Positions 4,864 to 36,480 of a stretch of DNA of 36,718 nucleotides are shown piece by piece. Position 1 is the stretch's first letter. Each line of letters opens with the position of its first letter. Under the pieces are notes generated by a model. It worked only from the letters and a program-made list of their open reading frames with translations. It was not told the DNA's origin and did not search any database. The translations under genes and the position numbers were made by a program. Source of the DNA: Macrostomum lignano (taxonomy: Eukaryota); the NCBI GenBank assembly GCA_002269645.1, contig NIVC01001792.1, forward strand, positions 1 through 36,718, written 5' to 3'.

Positions 4864-5620
4864 TGCCTGCCTCTCTTTCCCGATCCCAATCTGGGCCCAG
4901 ATATGTAAAAGAGTTTCAAAATTGACTAACTTTCAGCTGCCATAAATTTGCTCCACGTGAAGCGATTGACTTCAAACTTGACACAATTCTTCATTGACTC
5001 ATTCTTTATCTAAATGTAGAGTTTCAACTCTGTAACTCAACCAAAAAAGAAACTGTAAGCATTTGAAGTTTGTCTGCTTTTTCTGTTGTTTGTGCCACTC
5101 ACTCACTCATTCTCCCAGAGCCAGACCAAGGGTCAAGCAATAAGGCTGAATGTACATGGCAATGTATAGTGTTTTGGAATAGCTTTGTTTATGGCTTTCT
5201 CTACACCCTGTGGAGAGGCTATGTTTAGTCATCCATAACAGTTTAGTGAGTAGCATTGTCCTCTGTATAGGCTCTGTATACATTAGAAAATTTTTATATT
5301 CATTTTGTTTTCGTAACTGATATGCATTGCGTACAGTCAATAAATTACAATATAATTGTTGTTTTACTTTGCACTTTTTAGAACATCATTTTAAAATGAT
5401 TATTCTTGCATTTATTCTTATTGTACCTTAATGATAAAAAAATGATAAAGTAAAAATTCTAGTTCAATAAATCATAGAAATAAATAAATGCTTCATGTTT
5501 ATTTTTTCATAGACCAATGTATAATACTATTTTATTTGTTAGTCTATGGCATTTTGATTGACTTGAAGTACTTGTTCAAATAAATGACAAAAGTTTTCAT
5601 TTTTATACCTTATAATATCT

Positions 5621-8600
5621 GGGTTATTCCATGATAGGGTCATCAAAGGTATAGAAATTTTTTTTTTAATTATTTGCAAACGTGAATATTTCAATTTGCA
5701 TATAATTATGTATAGTTTCATTTTTATGTAGTTTCATACACATTTATCTACCTCTAGGTATAAATATTTTGTTTTGATCATGGTACCCTTGCAAGATTTT
5801 AAATGTCCCGCGGGACATTATAAAAAGTTAATCTAGTTTTCAACAAGAAAAAAAGTTAATAAACATAATGCATCAAGTGCATAAATAATAAAAATCTTTC
5901 TTTCTTATATCTAAAGACTGAAATTATAAAGTTTTATGATCTAATATAGTTCTATCTATCATAATTTTATATTTTAAAAAGTTTGACTTCCTTTTTCCAA
6001 GTGTTAAAAACGACCATCATTTTTTTTACAAAAAGTTGTTGTACTAATTTTCAAGAGGTTTATAAGTTGATAATTTTTTGCTGAAATGTTTTCCAAGCCT
6101 ATATTTAAGTTTATAGTCATTTTTGTTAGTGTATGATAAGTGTAACATGCTAAAAAAAACCTGCAAAGTTACCTAACGACCATCATTTTCTGGTATTCTA
6201 AAATCTGTTGATCTTCATAAAACCTGAATTACTATCATTTATTCCTAAATTTTATACAAAAAACTGAATTTACTGATATTTTAAAATCATGTCTTTTTAA
6301 AATGTGAATTACTTATTCAATTTCTATTTCAAAGTTTGTACAGTTTTGATTGTAAAGAAAAATATACTGGAATTCAAGTCTTTCATTAAAAATGTATAAG
6401 TGTCAATTACTTGTTTGATACCTTAAAATCATTTTCAACCTGCACTATTAAAAAGTTTGTTCAAATTACTAACCATGCACCTAGAACTCTCCACTTTAGT
6501 TTGCACTGCACCTTAACACATGCCTTAATCTTCAGCATTAGTAGTCTAACTAGACGTCAAGTCTTAGTCTTTAATCATGCCACGTCCAAAAAAAAGCCAG
6601 GCATTAAATAGTAAAAACTATCGCATAAAACATGCTGGCACTCTTAAAGAAAAGGAAAGGCTGCGAAGTGCTCGCCGCCGGAAGCAGCAGAAATCGGAGG
6701 CAACAATAAAGAAGGAGCGTGAGCAGGGCAGATTGCGCTACCAGGCCTGGTGTGCACGCCAGAAGGCTGCTGCTGATGCTGCTGTTCCTGAGCCCGATGC
6801 ACAGGATGCATATAAAACGAAGCAGGCGACTTCTCGTGCATTGAACAAGTAAGTAAAAATATACAGAGCCTCTACTTTGGACATCTGATTTTTCATTTCC
6901 TTGATTAAACTGATTAATACATGTGGTTTCTAATTCTGAAAACTGCATTATGTACATTCGTCTACCCACACTTCTCAATCATAGGGCTCGCGATGCACTT
7001 CCAAGGACCCCTTCAAGGCGACAGACGATTCTGATGCGCCTGGTTCAAGAGAACAGTCTGCCACTTCCGAAGCCCATTGTGAGGTGCCGTCTACCGGATG
7101 AGGTCATTATGGACGTCACAAATTTCTTCCTAAGGGATGACATTTCCCAGTGTTCTCCTGGTCGGAAGGAATATGTGCGTGTCGATAATGAACCCATTCA
7201 GAAGCGGTACCTCTTAATGAGTCTTAAGGAGGTGCATAACCTGTTCAGTCGCGAATCAGGGCACATTGTCTCGCTGTCAAAGTTTTGTGAGCTGCGCCCG
7301 AAGCATGTTGTGCCTTTCGGCAACACGCCGGTCTATTCGTGCTGTTGCCTCGAACACGAGAATTTTAAAAGGTACTTTACAACTTAAATTGATAAATCAA
7401 CCAGTAAAAAACCATTAAAGTAAAAATTTTATTCATACATGTAACCTCTGTATTTTTCCAGCGTCTGCAATGCGCTGTCGCAGGTCACCAGGCTTCCAGC
7501 CTATTCATCAGATTGGCTAGCCACGGTTGTCTACTGTAATCCTGCCACCCCACGGTGCGCCGTTGGCTTGTGCGATGTGTGCAGCAGCTCGGATAGTCAT
7601 CGCATCCCCAATCCTGACCCTGAGGTTTTAGAGGATGGGGTCACCTTCCGCTTCTGGCAGCGCAACGAGCAGTCGCAGCGAATGGAGCAAGATGCCCGAG
7701 CCGTCACAGTCGACACGGCTCACAAGCTCCTGCTGGCGTTGCTGCCCAAATTTATTGTCCATGAGAGGACCAGAGTGCACCAGTCGGCCGCTTATCGCGA
7801 TAGGAAGGCTGCTCTCGCTGAAGACGAGCAAATTTTTCACTTTGATTTTAGTGAAAATTATACCTGCGCGCACCAGGATGCAACACAGCAAGCCTACTGG
7901 TGCCAAAACCAGGTGACGATATTCACCGTTGCTGTCTATCGCAAATCCTGCTCCATTATGTTGGCCCTGGTGAGCGACTCAACCGACCACACGAAGTCAA
8001 CAGTTTCGGTGCTTCTGTCCTACCTACTTCGGGTAATACGATAACTTGAAAACTCATTCCAAAGTTTTGGAAAACTTTCTAAAAATCCGTTTTTTGCGTC
8101 ACACAAAACCATATAAGCATAAATTTTCCCCTTATCCAGAGGTTCGCTACACCAGGCCAGCGGGTCCGGTTCTGGAGCGACGGCCCTGCGAGCCAATTTA
8201 AGAACAAGTTCATGTTCCACTTTACTGAATTGGCATGCCGTGAGTTCGAGCTGGCCGAGTTGTCGTGGGAATTCTTCGCCACGTCCCATGGCAAGGGGCT
8301 ATCGATGGCCTCGGTGGGACTCTGAAGCGCTTTGCCTGGTGCGAAGTTAGAACTCGCAACGCTATCGTCCAGGACGCTGAAGACTTCGTTAGGGTTGTTG
8401 AAAAGTGCGATATTGACTGTCACCTGATTAAAAAGTGTGACATCCAACAGGAGTATGCTGATCGATTTCAACCAGCTCTTTTGGCTGCTCCTGAGGTATT
8501 TACATGCACTACCTGTAATTTTAAAATGAAAGTCAATAATATTGGAATTCGGTAGCAGAAAATAAATTTAAGTGTAATACAATTAAATTTACTGAAAGTC

Positions 8601-9835
8601 CATCCTCAATTCTTCTGGCAGATTCCAGGCATAAAAAAGCTACACTGCTGGGTGGCTACATCTGCAGCTCCGCGTGCAGTAGGCTATGCGCTGTCAGGGG
8701 TGGCCGAAACTGCACTCAACCCTGTGCAGTCTACCCGCCACCGGGCCCCTGTGGCAGCCAGTTCAGTAACACCAAGCACCAGGCCTGAAACTCAGGGTCT
8801 GCCTCCTGGTCAGCCGGGTTCCATCGCTATGCAACTCACCGTTGGCTGTTGGGCCCTTGTGAACTATTTTGGAGAGTCGTTTCCAGGCCAAGTTGAGGAG
8901 ATCAAATCCGGTCCTGAAATGGAGTGGAAAGTTAACGTGATGGTGAAGAGTGGTGGAAGCTTTGTATGGCCTCGAAGGAAGGACTCAATCTATTACGCCG
9001 CCGAAGACATCCTCACTATTTTGCAGCCCCCTGTGCCTACCGACTCGCGTGGCCATTTTAAATTTTCAGATTTTTGAACTGCTTTAAGGACGTTTTTACT
9101 ATCCATTGGTACTACTGCTTATTGCCTAACGAATAATCTGTATTTGCCTTTGGTTTTGTTAATTGTTATCTATTCTTTGAATTGTTGAATAGATTAGGAC
9201 TGTCCATCTTTATGATCATATGTTGAGTTGTGCAATCATGAAGTGATGTTTTGTTGAAGGTGCATAAGTACGTTTGATCTGAAATGTGAAACAGGTATGA
9301 TAAATTTTATGGTTAGACAAGCATTATATAATTTTAATATGAACAACTATGGATTATAAACAATCTTTTAACCGAGATCTTACCTAAAAATAGAGAATCC
9401 TGATACATTTTTTAAAACTGACGGTCGTTTTTTTGAAACAAACGACCGTCAGTCAACGACCGTCATTTAAGAAAAAACGTGCAACACAGTTAAACTTATC
9501 TACTAAAATGTAATAATTGTTTGTAACTGTTTATCTAGCTATTGTTTACTACAATTAATGATCAATTGAGATAAAAACTTGCCTGATTTGCAGAAATCTT
9601 AAACTTAAGTTAAAAAGTTGGTTACATAAACTTTCACCAAAAACGACCGTCATCGAAAGTTTCTCTCTGCTAAATCAACACAGTAAGACAAATGACTTTA
9701 GAATGTATCTCATCTCAATCTAGAGGTCACGCCCATAAATATAGAACTCACAAAGTCTCAATTTAGTTTGTCTTTTGTATGATTACTGATTATTATTTGC
9801 TCCAACCCAACGACCGTCATCTCGTGGAATTACCC
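5621..9835 (+). mobile_element. Full-length Sola2-type cut-and-paste DNA transposon (4215 bp)
   Basis: 4-bp TSD ATCT at 5617-5620 and 9836-9839; GGG...CCC termini; imperfect TIR GGGTTATTCCATGATA vs GGGTAATTCCACGAGA (13/16); subterminal AACGACC(A/G)TCA motifs at both ends; internal transposase gene. Confidence 0.88.
6577..9077 (+). CDS. Sola2-like DDD transposase, 5 exons, ~680 aa, with one apparent single-base frameshift
   Basis: Exons 6577-6848, 6985-7371, 7462-8032, 8140-8495, 8622-9077; all introns GT-AG with compatible phases. Motifs: basic N-terminus, CCCLEHEN, DFSENY (D at 7844), WSDGPASQFKN (D at 8179), FATSHGKG-AIDGLGGTLK (D at 8304). One G is missing in the run at 8295-8298. Confidence 0.85.
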
Positions 9836-11219
9836 ATCTTATGAATAGGAGCAGCTTTTAAGAAATAAATTATATTTTCTAATGTTAACATTTAATATGT
9901 TTAAGATTACATTTAACTTTAGCATAGTTTATAACAATTTACAATCAAAGTTGGTTAATTTTTGCATTGATAGCAAAATTTTAACACTTTATAAAACTTG
10001 TATTAGCTTCTACTATTCCCTATGAGAAGGTATATATACTAGTAATATTATACTTTCTAAAGGCATTCAAAGTATTTTTTAACTGTTTATTATCTATCAC
10101 AAATATGCATAAATGCTTGGCATGCTTCAATATATTTTAATGGAAAAATATACCTTTAGAATATAGAAAACTTTTAGCTAATATTCATAAAATATTAGTA
10201 ATAAAAATATAATATTTACTCTTTTTCATGCCTTTAAATATTGTTTTACCAAATGTACCTTAACACTGCAAAGCTATAATAATGTCTTTATCAAAACAAA
10301 AAATGAAAATAATTTAGATGTATTAAAGTAATGATCCTAAAATGAATTGCTTAGCAACTATACAATATTATTCTATTACAAAGCATTTTAAAAACTTTTT
10401 TCAGATAGCTTAAATGTTGCAAAGTTTTTCTCAATACATTAGTATAATACTTTTGTTTAGTTAGAAAATTGATTGGTTTTATCCAAAAGACAAACCAGTA
10501 ATGATGATGACTCACTAATTCCTATATTCAAAAGAATAATTACGAGTCATATACTATCATAATTACTAAAATTATGGAATGCCCCACACAGTTGCTGCAT
10601 TAGTGCCACAATATATACATGCCAAAATCTTACTAATATTATTTGCAGGTGGGTTGCAGGAACCCTGAGGCAATTCTGCCCATTCCACTGACTCTTGAGC
10701 TGTATGCAGGCATGCATATGTACACCTTCTCACACAGGGTGTACAGTGACCCTGACTTCCTTATCATCAGGCATGTACACTCTTTTCATTGGGGGTTGGT
10801 CCTCATGTTTGTGAATGGCATAACATCCCCTGGCCAATTTTTGTGCACACAAGCCGCAAGCCCAAATGAATGTGGCCACACATTGAATCAAACCAAGGGG
10901 TCATGGGGTAAAAGTCAGACACATTTATTGCTATGCTAAGCTACTCTTTCCCATGACAATCTCTTTGCTGTGCCAACCAGTCTAAACATGCGCCATATGA
11001 TTGGATGCCATTTGTTAACTTATTTTAATAGAGATTTTGTTAGATGCTATTCAGCATTTCAAATGTCTGTAGTAGTCAATTTAGAATTTTAAATCGCTAT
11101 TACATTGCACTATTGTGTACTGTGCACGTGTTGGCCACATTGAGTGTCGTATTTTTAGCAGCAAGCTTATACAATATACCGGGCAAATCACTCTGCTTGA
11201 TACCATTAGCACTGATCAG

Positions 11220-11370: not shown

Positions 11371-14300
11371 ATGGAGCCTCAGCTGCGAGCGACATGCTTC
11401 AAAAAGCGACTGTGCCATCGGTATCTGCTGCGCAGCAGTGGCAGCTCCGTCTCCAATCACCCTCACCTTCAGCAGCAGCAGCCACATCAACATCGCAGCG
11501 ACATTGTTGCCACCGTCGATAGTTTGCATTCTCAAGTGTGCCAGTCGCCACCAACTTACATTACAGTTTCTTCATCGTCTACTGCGTTTCCTTCTAGTTC
11601 CTTATTTTCTTCTCAATCTCCGAGTTTGCCTTCCCGTCTGTCGCAAAGCGTTTCTTCTTGGCCAGACGCTTCCAAGATGGCCGCCTCGCTCTCTGCTAAT
11701 GCAGTCGTCTCGATGTCTCCACCGACAAGACGGTCGCCGCGTTGGTGGCCGTGCAACGTCTGCGGTCGTAGATTTCAACGCAGTGATCTGCTTCGCAGGC
11801 ACGCCCGAAGTCATTCTGGTCGACGTGACTACCTGTGTGAAGAGTGCGGTCAGGCTTTTGCTAGGTGAGGCTTCTCAGTTAAGTGTATAACTATTAATGT
11901 GAACAAATTAGTGCTTGTCATTCTGTTATTTTTACCCTTTATCAAATCTGAGTAGGCGCTACCCTTCATCAAATCTGAGTAGGCGCTACCCTTCATCGAA
12001 TCTGAGTAGGCGCTACCCTTCATCGAATCTGAGTAGGCGCTAGCCTTCATCGAATCTGATAGGCGCTAGCCTTCATCGAATCTGAGTAGGCGCTACCCTT
12101 CATCAAATCTGAGTAGGCGCTACCCTTCATCGAATCTGAGTAGGCGCTACCCTTCATCGAATCTGAGTAGGCGCTACCCTTCATCGAATCTGAGTAGGCG
12201 CTAGCCTTCATCGAATCTGATAGGCGCTACCCTTCATCGAATTCGAATCTGAGTAGGCGCTAGCCTTCATCGAATCTGAGTAGGCGCTAACCTTCATCAA
12301 ATCTGAGTAGGCGCTACCCTTCATCGAATCTGAGTAGGCGCTACCCTTCATCGAATCTGAGTAGGCGCTACCGTTTATCGAATCTGAGTAGGCGCTACCC
12401 TTCATCAAATCTGAGTAGGCGCTACCCTTTATTCTCAAATCAATTTATGTATTATGTATGTAAACAACAACATTAGTGGCAAAAATAAGGGTGTTGTTGT
12501 GACGCTAAGTGCTTATTTATAGAAAACTTACTTGAATTAATTTATAAATTTAGAGTACTGACGTAGATCAGTTTGATTTATCACCAGCTAGTTTCATTCT
12601 GTTAGGCCAGCTCATACGCTACTTGTTTGGCTGCACAAAGCGAGACGTTCTTTACCATACCATTTTTGAAGTTTGTGCATGAGGTTGTTTGTGTTTTCCG
12701 TGTTTACTTCCTAGTAGAGTTGCCAAGTTAAGAGTCAACCAGTTTCTTGTAAAGAGCCGGTAGGGGGGGGGCGACAATGACTCAACACGGCTGATCCTAA
12801 CTGCTTCAACACCGGCTGAGGTTGGGAAGAAGACGGAGCATTTTAATTGTTAGCTCACACACCCTTCTAGTGTATATTTATCATATAAGTAAATAAAGGT
12901 TAGGCAAAGGTCAGCCAGGCATTGTAACCGCGTTGCAACGGATCAGTTCATAACAGTGCGCTCTCGTAGTTCAAATTGTGAGCTAATGATTTTGGTTTAG
13001 TGCAACCAAAGCTGTTCTGTCTGCCTGACCTTTGATTTGCTTGGATGAAAAGCCTTTTGGGGCAAAGGTTAAACTGAATGGAATTTGACCTTACTATCGG
13101 TGCAGCCTACTGCAGAGATGAAAATTTGTTTTGGATTTTATTACACACAGTTCCTACCAATGATGACAAATATTGACCTCAGTTGACCTCGCAACTGCAT
13201 TCATTCATGCATCTGGGCCACGATCCATTATCAAACTTTATTAATTCTCAGAAATGAGGCTGGGACAAACCATGATATAAGTGGGCGATAACCGATCATA
13301 GTATTGTAAGAGTAGGTGGGCGATGACCAACCATGATATGATATTTAGACTCAAAGGGCGATGACCGATCATGATAAATGGACACAAAGAGTGATGACCG
13401 ATCATCATAAACAGACACAAAGGGTGATGACCGATCATTATAAACAGACATATAGGGCGATGACCGATCATGATAAGCAGACACAAAGGGTGATGACCGA
13501 TCATGATAAATAGACACAAAGAGTGATGACCGATCATGATAAATAGACACAAAGAGTGATGACCGATCATGATAAACAGACATATAGGGCGATGACCGAT
13601 CATGATAAGCAGACACAAAGGGTGATGACCGATCATGATAAATAGACACAAAGAGTGATGACCGATCATGATAAACAGACATATAGGGCGATGACCGATC
13701 ATGATAAGCAGACACAAAGGGTGATGACCGATCATGATAAATAGACACAAAGAGTGATGACCGATCATGATAAACAGACATATAGGGCGATGACCGATCA
13801 TGATAAGCAGACACAAAGGGTGATGACCGATCATGATAAATAGACACAAAGAGTGATGACCGATCATGATAAACAGACATATAGGGCGATGACCGATCAT
13901 GATAAGCAGACACAAAGGGTGATGACCGATCATGATAAATAGACACAAAGAGTGATGACCGATCATGATAAATAGACACAAAGAGTGATGACCGATCATG
14001 ATAAATAGACACAAAGAGTGATGACCGATCATGATAAATAGACACAAAGAGTGATGACCGATCATGATAAATAGACACAAAGAGTGATGACCGATCATGA
14101 TAAATAGACACAAAGAGTGATGACCGATCATGATAAATAGACACAAAGAGTGATGACCGATCATGATAAACAGACACAGAAGGTGATGACCAAATATATT
14201 TCAACGCCCGCCCGCAGATCTGACCACCTGGCAACGCACAGACGCAAGCACACGGGTGAGAAGCCGTATTCCTGCGGCCAGTGCAGCTACTCGGCCAGTC

Positions 14301-14488
14301 GAGGCGACATGGTCACCAGGCATAGGCGGACCATTCACCGCCAGGCTGGCGAAGGCTTCGCTGACGCCGAATCGAATTCAATAGCAGCTACGCGTAGTTG
14401 CCCTGTTAATGAGCAGCGTGTTCAAATTTCTCTGCCTTCAACCGCTGCTAGCGGCGTTTTCGAATCGTTGCGTTCCAGCACTCGCTGA
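11371..14488 (+). CDS. EGR-like C2H2 zinc-finger transcription factor (3 fingers, ~254 aa)
   Basis: Exons 11371-11864 and 14218-14488 joined in phase 2 (GTGAGG...CCCGCAG), which completes finger 2. Fingers: CNVC..RSDLLRRH..H, CEEC..RSDHLATH..H-TGEKPY, CGQC..RGDMVTRH...H. Ser-rich N-terminus; AATAAA at 14513. Confidence 0.85.
11935..12430. repeat. 27-bp minisatellite (~18 copies) in the zinc-finger intron
   Basis: Unit AATCTGAGTAGGCGCTACCCTTCATCG. Confidence 0.95.
13315..14192. repeat. 33-bp minisatellite (~26 copies) in the zinc-finger intron
   Basis: Unit TGATGACCGATCATGATAAATAGACACAAAGAG with variants; ends ~25 bp before the acceptor. Confidence 0.95.
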
Positions 14489-14893: not shown

Positions 14894-15394
14894 TTCGCAA
14901 GAATTTTCTGTAGATAATAAATTTTATTATTAGAAGTTATATCTGTTTAAATAGTTTGTTTTTATTGCATAGTTATTAATAAGTGCGTATTTTCTAGAAT
15001 CTGGTTGCTATTTACGCGTGTTTATACATGCAAATGCCTTTCATCTTACTTTTAAACTATAGTTTATCACTATCAGTCGCCGTAATAAGCTTTGTGTAAA
15101 TATACTTACTGCGATGCTATATAATGTTGAATTACTTCTTGGTGTCAATTGGCTATCCCTAAGGAAAAAAATTAAAATGCGCCTATCACAGTGCATTTTG
15201 ACGTCTCAAATAGTTAAAATCAAAAACTCAAGTGCATCGAAAAAATCTTGTTATATTATCAGACACTATAAATTTAACAGTAGCTCTGACTTGTTGGGTT
15301 TATAATTAAAATATTTTAGGACAATATACAGCTTAGATATTTTATCTTATGTACATGTTATATAAATGGCAATTACCCTTATAGTCTGCACAAG

Positions 15395-16565
15395 AACCGC
15401 TCCTTAAATATCCCCAAGAATCGCGCCTAAAATTTTCTAAGAACCGCCCCAAAATCTCCCTAAGACCCGTCCTTAAATCTCCGTAAGAACCGTCCCTAAT
15501 TCTCCCTAAGAACCGCCCCAATATCTCCCTAAGACCCGTCCCTAAATCTCCGTAAGAATCGTCCCTAAATCTCCGTAGGAACCGTCCCGAATTCTCCCTA
15601 AGACCCGTCCCTAAATCTCCCTAAAAACCGCCCCAATATCTCCCTAAGACCCGTCCCTAATTCTCCCTAAGACCCGTCCCTAATTCTCCCTAAGAACCGC
15701 CCCAATATCTCCCTAAGACCCGTCCCTAATTCTCCCTAAGAACCGCCCCAATATCTCCCTAAGACCCGTCCCTAATTCTCCCTAAGAACCGCCCCAATAT
15801 CTCCCTAAGACCCGTCCCTAATTCTCCCTAAGACCCGTCCCTAATTCTCCCTAAGAACCGCCCCAATATCTCCCTAAGACCCGTCCCTAATTCTCCCTAA
15901 GAACCGCCCCAATATCTCCCTAAGACCCGTCCCTAATTCTCCCTAAGAACCGCCCCAATATCTCCCTAAGACCCGTCCCTAATTCTCCCTAAGAACCGTC
16001 CCTAAATCTTTCTAAGAACGCCCCTAAATCTCCGTAGGAATCGCCCCTAAATCCCCCTAAGAACCGCTTCTAAATCGCCCTAAGAATCTCCCCTAAATCT
16101 TCTTAAGAATCGCTCCTAAATCTCTGTAAGAACCGTCCCTAATTCTCCCTAAGAACCGCCCCAATATCTCCCTAAGACCCGTCCCTAATTCTCCCTAAGA
16201 ACCGCCCCAATATCTCCCTAAGACCCGTCCCTAATTCTCCCTAAGAACCGCCCCAATATCTCCCTAAGACCCGTCCCTAATTCTCCCTAAGAACCGCCCC
16301 AATATCTCCCTAAGACCCGTCCCTAATTCTCCCTAAGAACCGCCCCAATATCTCCCTAAGACCCGTCCCTAATTCTCCCTAAGAACCGCTTCTAAATCGC
16401 CCTAAGAATCTCCCCTAAATCTTCTTAAGAATCGCTCCTAAATCTCTGTAAGAACCGTCCCTAATTCTCCCTAAGAACCGCCCCTAAATCTCCCTAAAAA
16501 CCGCCCCTAAATCTCCCTAAGAACCGCCCCTAAATCTCCCTAAGAACCGCCCCTTAAATATCTTT
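15395..16565. repeat. 23/46-bp minisatellite rich in CCCTAA hexamers
   Basis: Dimer CCCTAAGACCCGTCCCTAATTCT-CCCTAAGAACCGCCCCAATATCT, degenerate at the edges. Confidence 0.95.
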
Positions 16566-16799
16566 AAGAATGGCTTTCAGAATTTAATTGTGTTTAATTA
16601 AATCTCGCCGTTGAAATGTCAACTCTCAGTTGACATCAATCAATCACTCAAATTATGTTTATTGCTTGCTTTTCCTTCTGCATTCCGAATTTTCTCGAAC
16701 ACTGACCGTCTTTGCAGTTTATCGGAAGTTGTCTGGTTTTTGTTTCAAGATTTTATTAATTTAAAAAAAACAAAGCAAACTTCTCATCGCATAGTTGCT

Positions 16800-19339
16800 A
16801 TGGCAACCGCGTACACCTGCGAACACTTGAGCACTCAGCTGGGGCCCGGCAGTCCCGGCCGCGGCCAATATGAGATGCTATTAAAGCGACTCGTTTATCC
16901 TCGCAGTCCAGTCGAACGGGTGCTGAAATCCCAGAAGCAGAAATGCGCCCAATGCGACAGTATGGCCAGGGTTCACGCTTGCCTACTCTGCGTTCACTTT
17001 GGTTGCTATGGCAACGGTCATATTCAAGGTCACGTGGACGCAGCGCATCCGGCCGGAGGATCTCAGGCTAGGCTAAGCGTGGATTTGAGCTCTGGCCAGG
17101 TTTACTGCCACGATTGCTCGGATTATCGCTACGATCTTAGCCTGCTGCAGATGCTGCGTCAGTGCCGACGGCGGGCCTTCAAATCGTTAGGCGTGCCGAA
17201 CTTCTTCGAAGACTGGATACCCTCTGAGGAGTTCCTAGCCGTGCTGGCTAAGAATCGATTGAATCTGCGAGTGTCAACTAATCAATTGCTGGGATTGCGC
17301 GGCCTGGTTAATCTGGGCAATACCTGCTTTATGAGCTGCATTGTTCAGGTTAGTAAATATTGCTTTTAAACTACTTAGTAAGTAGTAAAGAAACCAGTTG
17401 ATTATTTTTGTCTGTTAGCATACTGTCTAGAAGGACTGTTCGTTCGTTCACAAAAGGTGATGTTAGAAGACTACAATAAAACTGATCAGATACATCATAC
17501 AAACAAATTCTGACAACATGAACAGTTCTGACACAACATGAAGAACAGTTCTGACACAACATAAACAGCTCTGACTCAACATGAAGAACAGTTCTGACAC
17601 AACATAAACAGCTCTGACTCATGAACAGTTCTGACACAACATGAAGAACAGTTCTGACACAACATGAACAGCTCTGACTCATGAACAGTCTTGACACAAC
17701 ATTAACAAGTTCTGACACATGAACAGTCCTGACACAACATTAACAAATTCTGACAAAACATAAAGAACAGTCTGACACTACATGTACATGAGGAACAGTT
17801 CTGACACAACATGAGGAACAGTTCTGACACAACATGAGGAACAGCTCTGACACACCTAATACCATGTGTCAGGTCACGAATACCTACAAACCGTCCCTCT
17901 CAGGCACTGGTTCACACGCCCGTGCTGCGCGACTTCTTCCTGTTGGATCCGCACTCCAGCCTGCGCGAGCACCCCGCCCTGTCCTGCCTCGTGTGCGAGT
18001 TTGCCCGACTATTTCGCGAATTCTATTCCGACTGCGATAATCCATTCGTGCCGAGCTCCACTCTGCACTTAATCTGGGTGCACGCGCACCATCTAGCCGG
18101 CTACGAACAGCAGGACGCGCACGAATTTCTAATGGCCGCTTTAAATCTGCTGCACCAGCATTTCCAAGCCGATTCTGGCAGCGGAGAGCCGAACGGTTGC
18201 ACAGTTGGTCACCAGCTGCAGTTACAGCAGCAGAGAAGTCCATGCCGGTGCATTGTTGACCAAGTGTTCTCTGGTGAATTCCAGTCCGATCTCAAGTGTC
18301 TCGGCTGCGACAGCGTCTCGCGTACTATCGACCCGTTTTGGGATATTTCGTTGGATATGAACACCCTGACTAGCGAGAGTCAGACTCTTGGCTGCTCTCT
18401 GGAACGGTGGGTATTTTAGCTTTAGAGATGAACCTGGTGCTGGTAAAAACAGCGCGGTAATTTTCCGTTTAGAAAATGAGGTCTCGGATAATTCGTATGG
18501 GAATTTTGGGAGCTAAGATAATGAATTAATGGATTCTCTGGGGAATTTAGGCATTCTAAATGGAACTTGGGTGCATTCTAGGGAAATTGAGATATTCTAG
18601 GGGTAATTCAGGCGTTCTAGGGTAATTCAGGCGTTCTAGGGGGAATTTAATCATTCCAGGGGGAATTTAGGCATTCTGGGGAGGGAGTTTAGGCATACTA
18701 AATGGATTTTATACATTCAAAAGAAATTTATACATTCTAGGGATAATTCAGGGGGGATTTGGAGGATTTCGTTGGGGAATCAAAAGATTCTACGGAGGAA
18801 TCGAGGGATTTTAGTGGAGAATTCCGTAGGAAAGAATAATATATTTTTGGGTTTTGAAAAGAACTGCCCAGGTGTGCCGCATTGTTTGCAGGTACATCGC
18901 CCCCGAGCATCGAGGCAAGATTCGCTGCTTCCGCTGCCAGACAGTGCAAGACTCTATCAAACAGTTGACCTTTCGCAAGCTGCCAGTTGTGGCCTGTTTC
19001 CATTTCAAACGGTTCCAGCACGCCTGTCTGAATCACAGGAAGATTAGCACTCACATCTCGTTTCCCGAGCTGCTCGACATGACACCGTTCATGTCTAGCA
19101 AGGCTAATCACGACGACTCGTTGGAGCGTCTTGGCAAACAGTACCGCCTGTTCTGCGTAGTGAATCACTCCGGTAGTCTGAGCGCCGGTCACTACACCTG
19201 CTACGTGCGGCACAATTGTAACACCTGGTACAAATGCGACGATCACCAGATTAGCGATGTGCCAGTGTCTGAGGTGCTGACCTCCGAGGGCTATCTGCTG
19301 TTCTATCACAAAGTTGTGCTAGATTATCATGTCACTTAA
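16800..19339 (+). CDS. USP22: Ubiquitin-specific protease 22 (SAGA deubiquitinase; Ubp8/nonstop ortholog), ~499 aa
   Basis: Exons 16800-17348, 17904-18406, 18892-19339. ZnF-UBP (HACLLCVHFGC...VYCHDCSDYRYD), Cys box GLVNLGNTCFMSCIVQ, QQDAHEF, TIDPFWDISLD, LPVVACFHFKRF, His box NHSGSLSAGHY, WYKCDD. Confidence 0.93.
17505..17860. repeat. Minisatellite in USP22 intron 1
   Basis: Variable ~20-bp units GAACAG(T/C)TCTGAC(A/T)CAACAT. Confidence 0.9.
18495..18830. repeat. Degenerate ~19-bp minisatellite in USP22 intron 2
   Basis: Units like GGGGAATTTAGGCATTCTA. Confidence 0.8.
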
Positions 19340-19588: not shown

Positions 19589-20475
19589 CAGCTGCTAGAG
19601 TAGCTAGATATGCCGCTCGCAATTAAAGTTATGAAAGAAGTACACATCTACTCTTCCCGATGGGAAAAGGGCAGCCTTAGGGATAAGGGATAAGCTTATT
19701 TCAGTAGTTTGTCTGTGCTATGTCACTTAAATTTTATGTGGCAGCTAAAATTTCTTTTTGCTTCGTCGGGGCGTATGGGTTTAAGAAGGAACAGCAAGAA
19801 TTTAACTCCTACACAAGCGAACCCAAGATGGACGAAACTCTGTCTAGGGGACAGGCCCAATCTGGCTCAGCCAATGAGAGAGCAGTAAGGAGAGAGGTGA
19901 AATTTAGAAGAAACTCAGCCTAGGGGACAGGCCCAATCAGCCAATGAGAGAGCAGTAAGGAGAGAGGTGAAATTTAGACGAAACTCAGCCTAGGGGACAG
20001 GCCCAATCAGCCAATGAGAGAGCAGTAAGGAGAGAGGTGAAATTTGGACGAAACTCAGCCTAGGGGACAGGCCCAATCTGGCTCAGCCAATGAGAGAGCA
20101 GTAAAGAGAGAGAGGTCAGTCAGACGGACGAAACTCAGCCTAGGGGACAGGCCCAATCTGGCTCAGCCAATGAGAGAGAAGTAAGGAAAGGTGAAATTTG
20201 GACGAAACTCAGCCTAGGGGACAGGCCCAATCAGCCAATGAGAGAGCAGTAAGGAGAGAGGTGAAATTTGGACGAAACTCAGCCTAGGGGACAGGCCCAA
20301 TCTGGCTCAGCCAATGAGAGAGCAGTAAAGAGAGAGAGGTCAGTCAGACGGACGAAACTCAGCCTAGGGGACAGGCCCAATCTGGCTCAGCCAATGAGAG
20401 AGAAGTAAGGAAAGGTGAATTTTGGACGAAACTCAGCCTAGGGGACAGGCCCGATTTGGCTCAGTCAATGAGAGA
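19589..20475 (+). mobile_element. Dispersed repeat copy A with an internal 68-80-bp tandem array
   Basis: The unique part (CTTATTTCAGTAGTTTGTCTG...TGTCACTT.AATTTTATGTGG.AGCTAAAAT...TACACAAG.GAAC) and the tandem unit GACGAAACTCAGCCTAGGGGACAGGCCCAATC..CAGCCAATGAGAGAGCAGTAAGG both recur inverted at 26465-26889. About 9 units. No TIR or TSD found. Confidence 0.7.
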
Positions 20476-22790: not shown

Positions 22791-22879
22791 AGTAATATCA
22801 GCTTCTAATTAGTCACTAAGACAAAATAGCATCCACAATGTTTGCCGCTTATCTTATCCTATTCCATCTTACAAAATTC

Positions 22880-25177
22880 ATGTCGTCAAGCGAGCGCAGC
22901 AAGCTGTCAAAATTCTGCCAGCCCGGCAGGCCGTATGTCCGCATCTGCGCACCGATGGTTCGCTACTCCAAGCTTCCGTTTCGCTATCTGATGCGTCAGT
23001 ACGGCTGCGACCTGTGCTACACGCCTATGATCGTCGCTTCGTCCTTTCTGTGCTCCGACAAGGCCAGGGACAACGAATTCGTCACTGGGCCGGGCGACCG
23101 GCCTCTCATAGTGCAGTTCGCTTCTAACGATCCGGCAGAGTTCGCCGCCTGCGTCCAGTTGGTCGAGCCGCACTGCGACGGCGTGGATTTGAATTGCGGC
23201 TGTCCGCAACGCTGGGCCAATCAGCAGAATCTTGGCGTTTGTTTGTGCTCACAGCCGCAACTGTTAGCAGAGATGCTCACGGCTGCCAGGGCGGCGCTGC
23301 GATGTCCTAATAAGTTTGCGCTATCCGCAAAAATTCGATTGTGTCCGGATATGCGCGACACGGAGCGGCTGTGCTTGGTGAGCATGCCATACATGCGCAA
23401 CCTTGGGGATCACTGGCCGTTTCTATTGGCAACACACATATGTAAGTCGCTATTGGCTGAGAGCAGTCACGTGACTACTATTCTGTCCAATAGCGACTTA
23501 CATGTGTGTGCTGTGTGTGTCGCCAATATAAACAGCCGGGTGAATCCCTAGATTGCGCCCAAGCATGTTGGTGAGGGGAGAGCAGTATAAAATTAGCCCA
23601 ATGTACATTCTAAACCCAGAATGTAGATTGCCAGTTTGCTAAAAAATAGCCGCCCAAACCCAGAATGTAGATTGCCAGTTTGCTAAAAAATAGCCGCCCA
23701 AATCCAGAATGTACATTGACAGTGTGCTAAAAATAGACGCTTAAATCCAGAATGTACATTGCCAGTGTGCTAAAAAAATGCCCACATCCAGAATGTGCAT
23801 TGCCAGTGTGTTAAAAATAGACGCCCAAATTTAGAATGTACATTGCCAGTGTGTTAAAAATAGACGCCCAAAATCTAGAATGTACATTGCCAGTGTGCTA
23901 AAAATAGATGCCTTAACCCAGAATGTACATTGCCAGTGACCCAAAAATAGACGCCTAAACCCAGAATGTAGATTGCACAGTTTGCTAAAAATAGCCGCCC
24001 AAATCCAGAATGTACATTGCCAGTGTTCTAAAAATAGACGCTTAAACCCAGAATGTACATTGCCAGTGTTCTAAAAACGCCTAAACCCAGAATGTAGATT
24101 GCCAGTTTGCTAAAAATAGCTTCCCAAATCCAGAATGTACAATACATTGCCAGTGTTCTAAAAATAGACGCCTAACCCAGAATGTAGATTGCCAGTTTGC
24201 TAAAAATAGCCGCCTAAACCCAGAATGTATATTGCCAGTGTGCTAAAAATAGCTGCCCAAATCCAGAATGTACACTGCCAGTGTTCTAAAAATAGACGCC
24301 TAAACCCAGAATTGATGATGTGCTAAAAATAGCCACCCAAATCCAGAATGTACATTGCCAGTGTGCTAGAAATAGATGCCTAAACCCAAAATTTACATTG
24401 CCAGTGTGCTAAAAATAGACGCCCAAATTCAGAATGTACATTGTCTGTCCGTTCTGATTGGCTCTCCGTTCTCGCCTCTTTCCTCAGTCGCGCACTCCAC
24501 CCCCTCTCTTTATTATTCTGGGCTCAACCCCCAAAGTTAAATGTTCTATAAATATATCGGTTTGGGCCCTGCGCCCACTTACTGCTCTTCCTGCTCCTCC
24601 TGCTCCTTCAATTTAACTCCAATTAAATAGTTTTTTGTTTAGTTAGTATTTTTTCTACAGAGATAAGTAAAAATAGCTTTTGCCGCTCTTACCCACTCAG
24701 ACCCTCGAAAAGGCCGGAGCAGATTGGATAACTGTGCACTGTCGCACTCCAACCCAGCGTCACGAGCCGGCAGACTGGGAAGCTTTAGCCCGACTACGCT
24801 CTGTTTTGCCGACCCGCATAGCTCTGGTTGCCAATGGCGACGTGTTTAATCTATTGGACGCGGACAGATTACATTCTCTTACTGGCTGTTTAGGCGTCAT
24901 GTCCGCCAGAGGCCTAATACGCAATCCGGCCATGTTCTCGCCAGAGAGGCCGTTGACAACGCCTAACGAGTGCGTTCGACGATTTTTATGGCTGAGCTTG
25001 AGTCTGGGCCTACCCTATCCGGTGTTTCACTATCACCTGGTGCACATGCTCGAGGATCGATTGAGTCGGGCTGAGGCGCATTTCTTCAATTATTTGACCA
25101 GCGTAGCCGCTGTTATTGACTTTGTCAATCGGTGGGTTCTGAATGCTCATAATGGGGATTGTGGCAATGATGATTGA
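22880..25177 (+). CDS. DUS4L: tRNA-dihydrouridine(20a/20b) synthase 4-like, ~324 aa
   Basis: Exons 22880-23377 and 24701-25177 (phase 0, GTGAGC...CACTCAG). APMVRYSKLPFR, CDLCYTPMI, LIVQFA, catalytic DLNCGCPQRWA, ITVHCRT, ANGDV, GVMSARGLIRNPAMF. An alternative in-frame ATG lies at 22838. Confidence 0.92.
23595..24445. repeat. ~43-bp minisatellite in the DUS4L intron
   Basis: Unit CCAGAATGTACATTGCCAGTGTGCTAAAAATAGACGCCTAAAC with variants. Confidence 0.93.
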
Positions 25178-25880: not shown

Positions 25881-26464
25881 AACTGAACTCAGTCGTGGCA
25901 CAATTAATTTCGAATAAATTATGCTGCAGTGCGCCCTCTGTTTTATCTCATTAAAAGTGCCGTTATGACAGAGCTGAAATAATGTATAAGCCTATCATTA
26001 GCTGTCAGTGCAGGGGAATCTGTTACGATTTGAGATTCTGGCAATGTTTGTCTAAATCATTATTTCCATCTAAATCATCTGTCTTCCTTGTGTGTTCAGA
26101 TTTAAATTTACTGCCTAGTAACCACGGCTACTCGAATTACTAGATATGTCACTCGCAAAAAATCCGCTTATCTACTACTCTTCAGGAGCAAACGTAGCGT
26201 TTTTTGCCTTTAAAATAGTAAAATCAGAAATTTAATATAAAAAATTACAAGAACATTTTTTGCTTCAGCAAACCCTTGTTTAATTGACTCCAGACTGCCT
26301 CAGACTTGACATTATTCAAAAAGAAATAAATTCAAGACTAAGGATTCCAAGAAAACGTGAAAAATCTATAGCGAGCAAAAGAGAAAAGGGGTCGAACCAA
26401 CCCCCCAGCCAGGCCGATAAACAGGTCGGCTTTCCTCTTGTCCGCTTGTGTCTGATTTTGATAT

Positions 26465-26889
26465 CCCTCCTTACTGCTCTCTCATTGGCTGAGCCAGGTT
26501 AGGCCTGTCCCCCAGGCTGATTTTCGTCCGTCTGACTTTGATCTCTCTCCTTACTGCTCTCTGATTGGCTGAGCCAGATTGGACCTGCCCCTAGACTGAG
26601 TTTCGTCCGTCTGACTGACCTCTTTCCTTACTGCTCTCTCATTGGCTGAGCTAGATTGGGCTCCCTAGGCTGAGTTTCTTTACGTCTTTACGTTCACTTG
26701 TGTACATCAAGTTAAGTGCTTGTTGTTCATTCTTGACCCCATATGCTCCTGAGGGTGCAAACACCGAGGAAGACAAGATATTTTAGCTACCACATAAAAT
26801 TCAAGTGACACTGCGCACTGGCGCAGACAAACTACTGAAATAAGAGTAGACGTTGTACTTTTCAGAAATTCTAGTTAGTCTAGCATCTG
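26465..26889 (-). mobile_element. Dispersed repeat copy B (inverted homolog of 19589-20475), 3 tandem units
   Basis: The reverse complement aligns to the unique part and tandem unit of copy A with multiple substitutions and indels. Confidence 0.7.
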
Positions 26890-27236: not shown

Positions 27237-33647
<6,411 letters not shown>

Positions 33648-35397: not shown

Positions 35398-36480
35398 CGC
35401 CGTGTCATCGAGGAGGCGCGCATCCGCCAGTCTACGCTGATCATTTGTCTTCGTTGACTTTCGAAAGGCGTTTGCTTGACTCGGTGTTGAGAGCCGCGCT
35501 TCTTTTGTCCTTCGAGCCTACCGGGTCCGCAGCAGCTGTCATGTCGCTGTTCTGCAGGGCGACACACTAGCGCCGTTCCTCTTCGTGCTGCTGCTGCTGC
35601 ATGGACTGGATGCTTTGGACCGCACTCCCTCGGCTGATGACGGCTTCCTGCTGCGCAGACGCATCAGTCGCCGCCACTGCAAAAAGCGCCTGAGCGTGCT
35701 TGGCTACGCCGACGATCTCGCCCTCCTGTTCTCGGCCGTTGAAGGCGCCCAGCGCCAGATCGACAATAGGTTGGTTGAGGTGGCATCGAGCGTCGGTCTG
35801 GTTGTCAACACACTGAAGACCGAGGAGCTGACTGTGCCAGCCGACATCCCAGCGGACCTGACGTGCCGCGGCGCAGAGGGGCAGACGGCCAAGCTCGTAC
35901 GCTGCCAGTGGTTCACCTTACCACGGCGGTCTGGTGCCCACGTGAAGGAAGACCTCCGGCGGCGCAGAGGACTTGCCTGGGCGGCCTTCCGTTCAATCCG
36001 AGCCGTCCTCCAGTCCGAAGCGCTGCCTGACCGCCAGAGGGCTCGGCTGTGGCAGGCGGTGGTCGAAACCATCCTGCATACAACGCAGAGACGTGGACGT
36101 TGACGGCTACGCTGGAGCATCTAGCAGCTGCATGGACTCGACGCACTCAGGGCTGCAGCTGACGAGAGCGTCAGGACCGAGGCCCTGTACGATCGAGCCA
36201 AGCTGTAGCGCCCGTCCGTCATTCTTCGATGATGGCGCTAACGACTTCAACTGGCGGGTTACATGTACTGTACGTGATCCGGGCCCCGGCCTAGCCCCCG
36301 AACCTGTTCAGGACGTCTTGCTGCTCACACCTTGCAGGGCCCGTTTCAGGCGGGTCAGGCCCGAACCTGTCGATACGTGGACTGCCTGCTATGCGACGCT
36401 AGGGCACCGACACTGCCAACGTGGCGAACTTCGTCCGCTCTCAGGCTCTGCCATCTGACGCGCCTGCTCTAACTGTGACT
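35398..36480 (+). mobile_element. 5'-truncated, decayed RTE-clade LINE (reverse transcriptase remnant)
   Basis: Across frameshifts: RVIEEAR..IIVFVDFRKAF.DSV, AVLQGDTLAPFLFVL, GYADDLALL, GLVVNTLKTE, AWAAF, VVETIL...ETWTLT. Internal deletion before QGD. Confidence 0.85.

What the first reader, a model, noticed from the sequence alone, without database searches (positions are those of the whole stretch)
5621..9835. Structurally complete Sola2-type transposon with a four-intron transposase
Seen: both termini, an exact ATCT TSD and five phase-compatible exons with all three putative catalytic Asp residues. Established: Sola2 elements have GRG termini and 4-bp TSDs, and are poorly characterised experimentally. 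Inference: a recent and possibly still mobilisable element, a candidate tool or mutagen in this lineage.
Basis: partly seen in the sequence, partly recalled or inferred. Interest (0 to 1): 0.7.

Follow-up and report, generated by a model that had tools for sequence, protein, structure and literature searches.

The report
Young frameshifted Sola2 transposon in flatworm
This is one copy of a very young Sola2-type cut-and-paste DNA transposon in the flatworm Macrostomum lignano: its ends are intact but a one-base deletion breaks its transposase gene, so it is an ordinary, correctly recognised mobile element and not a new kind of system.

Summary
The observation mostly holds. Window 5621-9835 is a 4215-bp element with GGG...CCC termini (12/14 inverted repeat), an exact ATCT 4-bp target-site duplication and a five-exon, four-intron gene (all introns GT-AG).

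One claim fails. The copy is not structurally complete. A 1-nt deletion in the G-run at 8295-8298 shifts the frame two codons before the third catalytic Asp and gives a stop at 8323-8325.

The Sola2 assignment is confirmed:
- A family HMM scores the Repbase type element Sola2-1_HM at 171.6 bits, against 21.2 for Sola1 and 2.4 for Sola3.
- hhalign to two published amoebozoan Sola2 transposases gives 98% probability.
- The AlphaFold2 model places D348, D424 and D466 on an RNase H-like core.

The host is Macrostomum lignano. UniRef holds an intact 680-aa protein identical to the window's conceptual product. Four more gene models carry identical transposase segments, and two of those are demonstrably at other loci. 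The family is therefore very young.

Two related families in other organisms confirm the termini, the 4-bp duplications, and an array of 5-7 subterminal ACRNCCRTYA repeats at conserved positions.

Verdict: a new member of a known kind. It is probably mobilisable in trans, but mobility is untested. Interest is modest.

The parts
5617..5620 (.). Left copy of the 4-bp target-site duplication (ATCT)
   Evidence: Read directly. Related elements have 4-bp TSDs AATA and TATA.
5621..5636 (+). Left terminal inverted repeat, GGGTTATTCCATGATA
   Evidence: It matches the perfect 16-bp TIR GGGCAATTCCATGAGA of the related element L001/L002 at 13 of 16 positions.
6009..6019 (+). Subterminal repeat AACGACCATCA (left arm, copy 1)
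   Evidence: 7 copies against 0.04 expected. Position is conserved with L001 and L004.
6175..6185 (+). Subterminal repeat AACGACCATCA (left arm, copy 2), 166 nt after copy 1
   Evidence: The left-arm pair is spaced 166, 167 and 176 nt in the three families.
6577..6848 (+). Exon 1 (ATG at 6577; donor GTAAGT)
   Evidence: Translation is identical to P0001 residues 1-91.
6985..7371 (+). Exon 2
   Evidence: The junction is gap-free against intronless homologues.
7462..8032 (+). Exon 3, with the Cys-rich region and catalytic D348 (DFSEN motif, codon 7844-7846)
   Evidence: D348 is invariant in 32 homologues and sits at the end of strand beta1 in the model.
8140..8495 (+). Exon 4, with catalytic D424 (WSDG, codon 8179-8181), the frameshift site and the D466 codon (8304-8306)
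8295..8298 (+). G-run carrying a 1-nt deletion relative to the intact protein (HGKG|AIDG); the frame shifts here
   Evidence: The CDS length is 2042, i.e. 2 mod 3. P0001 reads HGKGAIDG at this point.
8323..8325 (+). Premature TGA stop in the shifted frame (product 471 aa instead of 680)
8622..9077 (+). Exon 5, encoding a disordered linker and a C-terminal all-beta domain; TGA stop at 9075-9077. It is reached only if the frame is intact.
   Evidence: residues 606-676, pLDDT above 90.
9419..9429 (-). Subterminal repeat, the only inverted copy; forms a palindrome with 9441-9451
9441..9451 (+). Subterminal repeat AACGACCGTCA; motif core starts 394 nt from the right end
   Evidence: L001 has a copy at the same distance (394).
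9455..9465 (+). Subterminal repeat; motif core starts 380 nt from the right end
   Evidence: L001 has a copy at the same distance (380).
9642..9652 (+). Subterminal repeat; motif core starts 193 nt from the right end
   Evidence: L001 has a copy at 193 and L004 at 192.
9809..9819 (+). Subterminal repeat adjoining the right TIR; motif core starts 26 nt from the right end
   Evidence: L001 has a copy at 26 and L004 at 24.
9820..9835 (-). Right terminal inverted repeat (reverse complement GGGTAATTCCACGAGA)
   Evidence: It matches the L001 TIR at 14 of 16 positions.
9836..9839 (.). Right copy of the 4-bp target-site duplication (ATCT)

Best explanation
Window 5621-9835 is one insertion of a Sola2-group (Sola superfamily) cut-and-paste DNA transposon in the Macrostomum lignano genome. 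It lies in AT-rich, non-coding DNA upstream of a C2H2 zinc-finger gene.

The family's 680-aa transposase has four parts:
- a basic helical N-terminus;
- a Cys/His cluster;
- an RNase H-like catalytic core with a D-D-D triad (D348 in DFSEN, D424 in WSDG, D466 in HGKGAIDG);
- a C-terminal all-beta domain.

Inferred mechanism: the transposase binds the short GGG...CCC terminal inverted repeats and an ordered array of subterminal ACGACCGTCA-type repeats. It excises the element and re-inserts it through 4-bp staggered cuts at AT-rich targets, which produces the ATCT duplication seen here.

This copy is very young. Its termini and TSD are intact and its coding sequence matches an intact copy at every residue. 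A 1-nt deletion truncates its own transposase before the third catalytic Asp, so it is non-autonomous. It could still be moved by transposase from the intact copies that the M. lignano proteome shows to exist.

Shown: the anatomy, the homology, the fold, the existence of other identical copies, and the conserved layout of the ends. Inferred: DNA binding by the repeats, the chemistry, and present-day mobility.
For: Anatomy:
- TSD, TIR, exons and frameshift.

Host and gene model:
- UniRef A0A1I8IAX8 (P0001, M. lignano, 680 aa) is 100% identical to the conceptual product and has Ala at the bridged codon.
- All four splice junctions are collinear with single-ORF homologues.

Sola2 homology:
- BLASTP against Sola2_DFa-2 gives E = 2e-6 across all three motifs.
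- hhalign of a 32-member family alignment against DFa-2 and PPa-1 gives probability 98% and E = 2.4e-13.
- The family HMM scores Sola2-1_HM at 171.6 bits (E = 1.4e-54), Sola1-1_AP at 21.2 bits and Sola3-1_HM at 2.4 bits. The reference sequences come from PMC3627910 supplement 3 and PMC3985635 supplement 5.

Fold:
- The AlphaFold2 model has pLDDT 82.5 and the order beta1-beta2-beta3-alpha-beta4-alpha-beta5-alpha. D348 ends beta1, D424 ends beta4 and D466 starts the next helix.
- The closest solved folds are retroviral integrase cores and RNase H1.

Family-level ends:
- L001 and L002 (41% aa identity) are two copies, 99.9% identical over 4.29 kb. They have a perfect 16-bp TIR GGGCAATTCCATGAGA and TSDs AATA and TATA.
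- L004 and L005 (28% aa identity) begin with GGGCAATTCC and have TSD AACA.
- Subterminal repeats lie at conserved distances from the right end in all three families.

Youth and copy number:
- Five M. lignano gene models carry identical transposase segments, all with an intact HGKGAIDG.
- The non-transposon parts of two of them are absent from this window, so they are at other loci.
Against: - No DNA of any other M. lignano copy, no empty site and no RNA-seq reads could be examined, so copy number, insertion polymorphism and splicing are all indirect.
- The frameshift lies in a homopolymer and could be an assembly error. In that case the copy would be autonomous, not defective.
- M. lignano carries recent large-scale duplications (my own knowledge), so some identical copies could come from duplication and not transposition.
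- Only one core segment each of Sola1 and Sola3 was available as a contrast.
- No Sola element has been shown experimentally to transpose in any paper I could find.
Confidence: 0.88

Rival explanations
1. The copy is intact and autonomous. The missing G in the GGGG run at 8295-8298 is a homopolymer error of the assembly, not a real mutation.
For: Every other residue is identical to the intact protein P0001. The only lesion is a single-base length change in a homopolymer, which is the typical long-read error. P0001 might even derive from this same locus in another assembly.
Against: The sequence as given has four Gs, and no reads were available to check it. Single-base indels are also the commonest real inactivating lesions of young transposons.
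Confidence: 0.35
2. The family is no longer mobile. The identical copies in M. lignano come from recent whole-genome or segmental duplication and not from recent transposition.
For: M. lignano has a recently duplicated karyotype (my own knowledge). Only gene models, not loci, were seen for the other copies.
Against: The identical transposase segments sit in different gene-model contexts: an RRM-gene fusion in P0110 and an unrelated C-terminus in P0002. Neither is present in this window. The TSD and TIRs are intact. The intact ORF is kept in at least four models.
Confidence: 0.15
3. The element belongs to another superfamily, either Zisupton/KDZ or Sola1/Sola3, and not to Sola2. UniProt labels relatives 'SWIM-type' and 'CxC1 domain', and some homologues carry Ulp1 protease domains, as Zisupton elements do.
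For: UniRef names of P0002 and P0006. Three of 32 homologues have Peptidase_C48 and one has OTU.
Against: None of the 32 members hits any Pfam model other than C48, OTU and two weak chance matches (HAS-barrel, HisZ-like), so no KDZ or other transposase model is matched. The family HMM matches Sola2-1_HM at 171.6 bits, against 21.2 for Sola1 and 2.4 for Sola3. The TSD is 4 bp, not the 8 bp of Zisupton (my own knowledge).
Confidence: 0.02

Closest known systems
Sola2 group of the Sola superfamily (type element Sola2-1_HM of Hydra; Bao, Jurka and Kapitonov 2009; RNase H-like family E.12 of Majorek et al. 2014, PMC3985635)
   Same: The catalytic core motifs correspond one to one: DFAENYT/DFSENYT, ISDDxTHD/VSDSTDHT, TDGCAGQYKN/SDGPASQFKN and WNFFATSHG/WEFFATSHG. 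Both have a DDD triad, a 4-bp TSD, a short TIR starting with G-purine-G, and a single transposase gene. The 4.2-kb size is within the 2-9 kb range given for Sola elements (PMC10741241).
   Different: Only 31% identity to Sola2-1_HM over the core. The host is a flatworm. The gene has four short introns, where most homologues examined here are single ORFs. This copy is frameshifted.
Amoebozoan Sola2 elements DFa-2 and PPa-1 (Bao and Jurka 2013, PMC3627910)
   Same: Homologous transposase core (E = 2e-6 pairwise; hhalign probability 98%). AT-rich 4-bp TSDs (AWWT there; ATCT, AATA and TATA here). Short TIRs of 12-22 bp. The published end alignments show the DFa-2/3 ends reading GAG...CTC.
   Different: Those elements are 10-14 kb and carry a Fanzor1 (TnpB-like) passenger gene, which is absent here. 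Identity is about 23%.
Unnamed related elements in metagenome-derived eukaryotic contigs (L001/L002 from ENA ERZ26052287; L004/L005 from ERZ21861969)
   Same: Same TIR motif (GGGCAATTCCA...). 4-bp TSDs. Similar size (4.28 and 3.62 kb). Subterminal ACRNCCRTYA repeats start 24-26, 192-193 and 380-400 nt from the right end, and the left-arm pair is 166-176 nt apart.
   Different: The transposases are 41% and 28% identical. The intervening non-coding DNA cannot be aligned. L001 appears to have one intron, at the position of intron 4. L004 has none.
Retroviral integrase catalytic core and RNase H1 (closest solved folds)
   Same: RNase H-like fold, with acidic residues on beta1, on beta4 and on the following helix.
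   Different: The structural match is weak (Foldseek E about 1e-3, target-normalised TM about 0.5, 12-14% identity). It shows only superfamily-level kinship. No Sola transposase structure has been solved.

Membership tests
Sola2 (Sola superfamily) | Transposase homologous to reference Sola2 transposases, and closer to them than to Sola1 or Sola3 | tested here: met
   Family HMM: Sola2-1_HM 171.6 bits, Sola1-1_AP 21.2 bits, Sola3-1_HM 2.4 bits. hhalign against DFa-2 and PPa-1 gives probability 98% and E = 2.4e-13. BLASTP gives E = 2e-6.
Sola2 (Sola superfamily) | DDD catalytic triad on an RNase H-like fold | tested here: met
   D348 is invariant, and D424 and D466 are conserved in at least 90% of 32 homologues. 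They align with the Asp residues of DFa-2 and PPa-1. In the AlphaFold2 model they lie on beta1, on beta4 and on the following helix. In this copy D466 is out of frame.
Sola2 (Sola superfamily) | 4-bp target-site duplication | tested here: met
   ATCT/ATCT here. AATA and TATA in L001 and L002. AACA in L004. The criterion is stated in PMC3627910 and PMC10741241.
Sola2 (Sola superfamily) | Termini 5'-GRG...CYC-3' with short TIRs | tested here: met
   GGG...CCC here and in L001/L002. The DFa-2/3 ends read GAG...CTC in PMC3627910 supplement 11. The wording 'GRG' of the criterion is from my memory of Bao et al. 2009, a paper that is not held here.
Sola2 (Sola superfamily) | Evidence of mobility: several copies with independent TSDs, empty sites, or excision | not testable with these tools
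   Only protein-level evidence of other M. lignano copies is available. The M. lignano genome is not in the searchable contig collections.
Sola1 / Sola3 | Transposase core matching the Sola1 (E.10) or Sola3 (E.13) reference | tested here: not met
   With default composition-based statistics, BLASTP finds no hit at E of 1e-3 or better. Without composition correction, Sola1 gives one 40-residue match around the second Asp (E = 0.008). HMM scores are 21.2 and 2.4 bits, against 171.6 for Sola2. The weak Sola1 score fits only distant superfamily kinship.
Zisupton / KDZ | KDZ-type transposase domain; 8-bp TSD (Zisupton) | tested here: not met
   No Pfam KDZ or CxC hit in the query or in any of 32 family members. 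The TSD is 4 bp. The 8-bp criterion is from my own knowledge.

The most novel reading that the evidence does not exclude
The family is currently active in M. lignano and would be the first Sola2 transposon open to experiment. Its ends carry a fixed-geometry array of same-orientation subterminal binding sites. The motif cores start 24-26, 192-193 and 380-400 nt from the right end, and the left-arm pair is 166-176 nt apart. This layout is conserved across families whose transposases are only 28-41% identical, while the DNA between the sites is free to vary. That would point to a multi-site, asymmetric transpososome architecture not described for this superfamily.
Probability: 0.35. Interest if true: 0.55.

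Novelty: new member of a known kind. Interest (0 to 1): 0.3.

Why it matters
Sola is one of the least studied eukaryotic cut-and-paste superfamilies. I found no paper with a transposition assay, a solved structure or defined binding sites for it.

A family with identical copies, an intact annotated ORF and clean ends, in a flatworm model that can be made transgenic, is a reasonable starting point for a first biochemical test of a Sola2 transposase. It might later yield an insertional mutagenesis tool for that animal.

The conserved spacing of the subterminal repeats gives concrete cis elements to test.

For genome annotation, the lesson is routine. M. lignano gene models labelled 'Integrase catalytic domain', 'RRM domain', 'SWIM-type' or 'CxC1' include Sola2 transposase exons that have been fused to host genes.

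Tried and rejected
- Pfam scan of the bridged protein and of 32 homologues found no transposase family. The only hits were C48 and OTU add-on domains and two weak chance matches.
- The protein comparison profile mode failed, and hhalign on the raw alignment files misbehaved. It worked after the files were rewritten.
- Bao et al. 2009 could not be fetched by DOI or by a guessed PMC id.
- Supplement 10 of PMC3627910 (the Sola2 alignment) is held only as a garbled machine description. I used the sequences in supplement 3 instead.
- Exact-protein look-ups of P0001 and of the exon-1 ORF in the contig collection found nothing, so no DNA of other M. lignano copies or empty sites could be obtained.
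- No second copy or fragment of the element lies in the window.
- A third TIR-like site at 10572-10585 has one mismatch and no subterminal motif nearby. I judged it to be chance.
- Rfam found nothing in the window.
- A single-sequence AlphaFold2 model of the C-terminal domain was too poor to search with (pLDDT 46.8).
- DNA alignment of the non-coding arms with L001 showed no similarity beyond the termini and the motifs.
- The Zisupton/KDZ, Sola1 and Sola3 assignments were considered and rejected.
Full report
**1. The observation**

The window is eukaryotic DNA, with AT-rich non-coding sequence and GC-rich exons.

The tetranucleotide ATCT lies at 5617-5620 and again at 9836-9839. Between the two copies, the element starts GGGTTATTCCATGATA. 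The reverse complement of its other end reads GGGTAATTCCACGAGA. The two ends agree at 12 of the first 14 positions. The strict terminal motif GGGNNATTCCAYGA occurs nowhere else in the 36.7-kb window. One 1-mismatch match at 10572 has none of the other hallmarks and is probably chance.

Five exons can be joined through four GT..AG introns of 136, 90, 107 and 126 nt: 6577-6848, 6985-7371, 7462-8032, 8140-8495 and 8622-9077. The introns are 24-32% GC and the exons 50-55% GC.

The spliced CDS is 2042 nt, which is not a multiple of three. In exon 4 the sequence CAT GGC AAG GGG CTA TCG ATG reads HGKGLSMASVGL and then stops (TGA at 8323-8325). One more G in the run 8295-8298 would give HGKGAIDGLGGTLKR, the most conserved motif of the family.

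So the termini, the TSD, the exon layout and the three Asp codons are real. The copy is not structurally complete, because D466 (codon 8304-8306) is out of frame.

**2. Host and gene model**

I searched with the conceptual protein, putting X at the frameshift. It found a 680-aa UniRef entry from the flatworm Macrostomum lignano (A0A1I8IAX8, P0001). The entry is identical at every residue and has Ala at the bridged position. This independently reproduces the four-intron model.

All four junctions also align without gaps to homologues encoded by single uninterrupted ORFs. These include P0021, P0020 from the ascidian Styela clava, P0010 and P0004.

No RNA-seq data could be consulted, so splicing is supported by annotation and collinearity and not by reads.

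**3. Family assignment**

Pfam has no model for this protein. Pfam hits among the 32 homologues are limited to add-on protease domains plus two weak chance matches.

I took reference sequences from the literature:
- The transposases Sola2_DFa-2 and Sola2_PPa-1, from supplement 3 of PMC3627910.
- The RNase H-like core segments of Sola1-1_AP, Sola2-1_HM and Sola3-1_HM, from supplement 5 of PMC3985635.

Comparison results:

| Comparison | Result |
|---|---|
| BLASTP, P0001 vs DFa-2 | E = 2e-6, one alignment covering all three catalytic motifs |
| hhalign, 32-member family profile vs DFa-2 + PPa-1 | probability 98%, E = 2.4e-13 over 165 columns |
| Family HMM vs Sola2-1_HM (Hydra type element) | 171.6 bits, E = 1.4e-54 |
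| Family HMM vs Sola1-1_AP | 21.2 bits |
| Family HMM vs Sola3-1_HM | 2.4 bits |

The core motifs correspond one to one with Sola2-1_HM: DFSENYT/DFAENYT, WSDGPASQFKN/FTDGCAGQYKN and WEFFATSHG/WNFFATSHG.

Together with the 4-bp TSD and the GGG terminus, every testable defining feature of Sola2 is met. A reading as Zisupton/KDZ was suggested by UniProt labels ('SWIM-type', 'CxC1') and by the Ulp1 domains of some relatives. It finds no support.

The family is large. There are 7176 clusters at 50% identity with E of 1e-3 or better, and 591 with E of 1e-30 or better.

**4. Structure**

An AlphaFold2 model built on the 32-sequence alignment is confident (mean pLDDT 82.5). It shows the canonical RNase H-like order:
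- strands 342-349, 370-379 and 384-391;
- helix 398-412;
- strand 418-424;
- helix 433-445;
- strand 450-455;
- helix 464-481.

D348 ends the first strand, D424 ends the fourth and D466 opens the helix. This is the expected geometry for a DDD/DDE transposase.

The nearest solved folds are retroviral integrase cores and RNase H1, at weak scores. No close relative has a solved structure.

A conserved Cys/His cluster lies upstream of the core (C210, C212, H215, C245, C252, C257, C260). Residues 606-676 form a confidently predicted all-beta domain.

**5. Comparative evidence for the ends**

P0003 is 41% identical to the window's transposase. It is encoded on two contigs of one ENA assembly (L001, L002). 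The two loci are 99.9% identical over exactly 4.29 kb and unrelated outside it.

That block begins GGGCAATTCCATGAGA and ends with the perfect reverse complement. It is flanked by AATA/AATA in one locus and TATA/TATA in the other. This is the same terminal motif as in the window, with independent 4-bp AT-rich duplications.

A more distant family (28% identity; L004, L005; 3.62 kb; two 100% identical copies) starts GGGCAATTCCAGG. Its duplications are AACA/AACA and TGTA/AGTA.

**6. Subterminal repeats**

The 11-mer AACGACC(G/A)TCA occurs seven times in the window, all in the non-coding arms of the element, against 0.04 expected.

The related families carry their own variant: GACATCCGTT(A/G) in L001 and TACGTCC(G/A)TCA in L004. 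The shared pattern is ACRNCCRTYA. The positions of the motif core are as follows.

| Element | Nt from the right end | Position in the left arm | Left-pair spacing |
|---|---|---|---|
| Window | 26, 193, 380, 394, plus one inverted copy at 417 | 390, 556 | 166 |
| L001 | 26, 193, 380, 394 | 362, 529, 575 | 167 |
| L004 | 24, 192, 400 | 366, 542 | 176 |

Except for the one inverted copy, all copies point the same way at both ends. The DNA between them cannot be aligned between families.

Conserved geometry together with co-varying motif sequence is what one expects of transposase-binding sites. That role is an inference.

**7. Age and copy number**

The 90%-identity cluster of P0001 holds three more M. 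lignano gene models, and P0002 is a fifth. Their transposase segments are 100% identical to the window's, and all have the intact HGKGAIDG.

One of them (P0110) is a fusion with an RRM-domain host gene, and another (P0002) has an unrelated C-terminus. Neither flanking part is present in this window. At least three loci therefore exist, and at least one intact ORF is annotated.

This points to very recent amplification. I could not obtain DNA of those copies, so duplication instead of transposition cannot be excluded for some of them.

The single lesion of the window copy is a homopolymer length change. It may be real or an assembly error. I put the error reading at about one in three.

**8. 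Mechanism**

Shown:
- a Sola2 element with intact cis ends and TSD;
- a DDD RNase H-like transposase gene broken by one frameshift in this copy;
- intact identical genes elsewhere in the genome.

Inferred:
- the transposase recognises the TIR and the subterminal array;
- it excises the element and integrates it through 4-bp staggered cuts at AT-rich sites;
- this copy is non-autonomous but could be mobilised in trans.

**9. Novelty and verdict**

Sola2 has been a described group since 2009 and is reported in many metazoans. A flatworm family with TIRs, a TSD and a DDD transposase is a new member of a known kind.

What is mildly new is the conserved, same-orientation, fixed-spacing array of subterminal repeats. 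The family also looks young enough to try as a first experimental Sola2 system.

Interest: 0.3.

Noticed in passing
window 6009-6185 and 9419-9819; L001 4495-8770; L004 6021-9638: The subterminal repeats keep nearly the same distances from the right end in three Sola2 families whose transposases are only 28-41% identical: about 26, 193 and 380-400 nt. The motif sequence itself differs between families, and the DNA between the copies cannot be aligned. Except for one inverted copy in the window, all copies have the same orientation at both ends.
   Followed up: yes
proteins P0023, P0025, P0030 (Peptidase_C48) and P0038 (OTU): Some Sola2-like transposases of about 900-1000 aa carry an extra Ulp1/SUMO-protease or OTU deubiquitinase domain. 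This recalls the protease domains of Zisupton elements and some MULEs. The window's protein has none.
   Followed up: partly
window 8850-9077 (residues 606-676 of the transposase): A confidently modelled C-terminal all-beta domain follows a disordered linker (residues 559-592). It has no Pfam match. Foldseek alignments of more than 300 columns to full-length retroviral integrases are too poor to interpret (rmsd about 18-21 A). A single-sequence model of the domain alone was too poor to search with.
   Followed up: partly
P0110, P0002, P0111, P0112, P0113 (UniRef M. lignano gene models): Published M. lignano gene models fuse Sola2 transposase exons to host exons, or truncate them. Examples are named 'RRM domain-containing', 'SWIM-type', 'SAM domain' and 'CxC1'. 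These are annotation artefacts caused by transposon insertions.
   Followed up: partly
P0004 (NCBI 'MAG: Kangiellaceae bacterium', 3.6-kb contig): A protein 45-47% identical to this flatworm transposase is deposited as bacterial. It is most likely a eukaryotic contig mis-binned into a metagenome-assembled genome.
   Followed up: no
window 5802-5819: A GC-rich perfect palindrome, AATGTCCCGCGGGACATT, sits in the otherwise 26%-GC 5' non-coding arm, about 180 nt from the left end. No counterpart was found in L001.
   Followed up: partly
window 10572-10585 (- strand): A TIR-like sequence, GGGGCATTCCATAA, has one mismatch to the terminal motif. It lies 740 nt downstream of the element and has no subterminal motif nearby. 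It is probably chance (0.25 expected).
   Followed up: yes
window 11371-31600: Host genes lie downstream on the + strand: C2H2 zinc-finger exons (11371-11868, 14150-14488), a zf-UBP/UCH ubiquitin hydrolase (16611-19339), a dihydrouridine synthase (22838-25177) and a protein kinase (27723-30239). Their introns are filled with long tandem arrays: a 33-mer x26 at 13338-14191, a 23-mer x51 at 15392-16570, (TCTG)n of 1.5 kb at 28159-29694 that splits the kinase domain, and a 23-mer x38 at 30273-31143.
   Followed up: partly
window 19829-20475 and 26450-26678: A tandem array with 70- and 224-bp periods lies upstream of the Dus gene. A shorter array of the reverse-complemented unit lies downstream of it, so the two form a large inverted pair around that gene.
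   Followed up: no
window 35585-36458: ORFs with a YADD motif suggest a reverse-transcriptase fragment of a non-LTR retrotransposon. They gave no Pfam hit at E of 1e-3 or better.
   Followed up: partly
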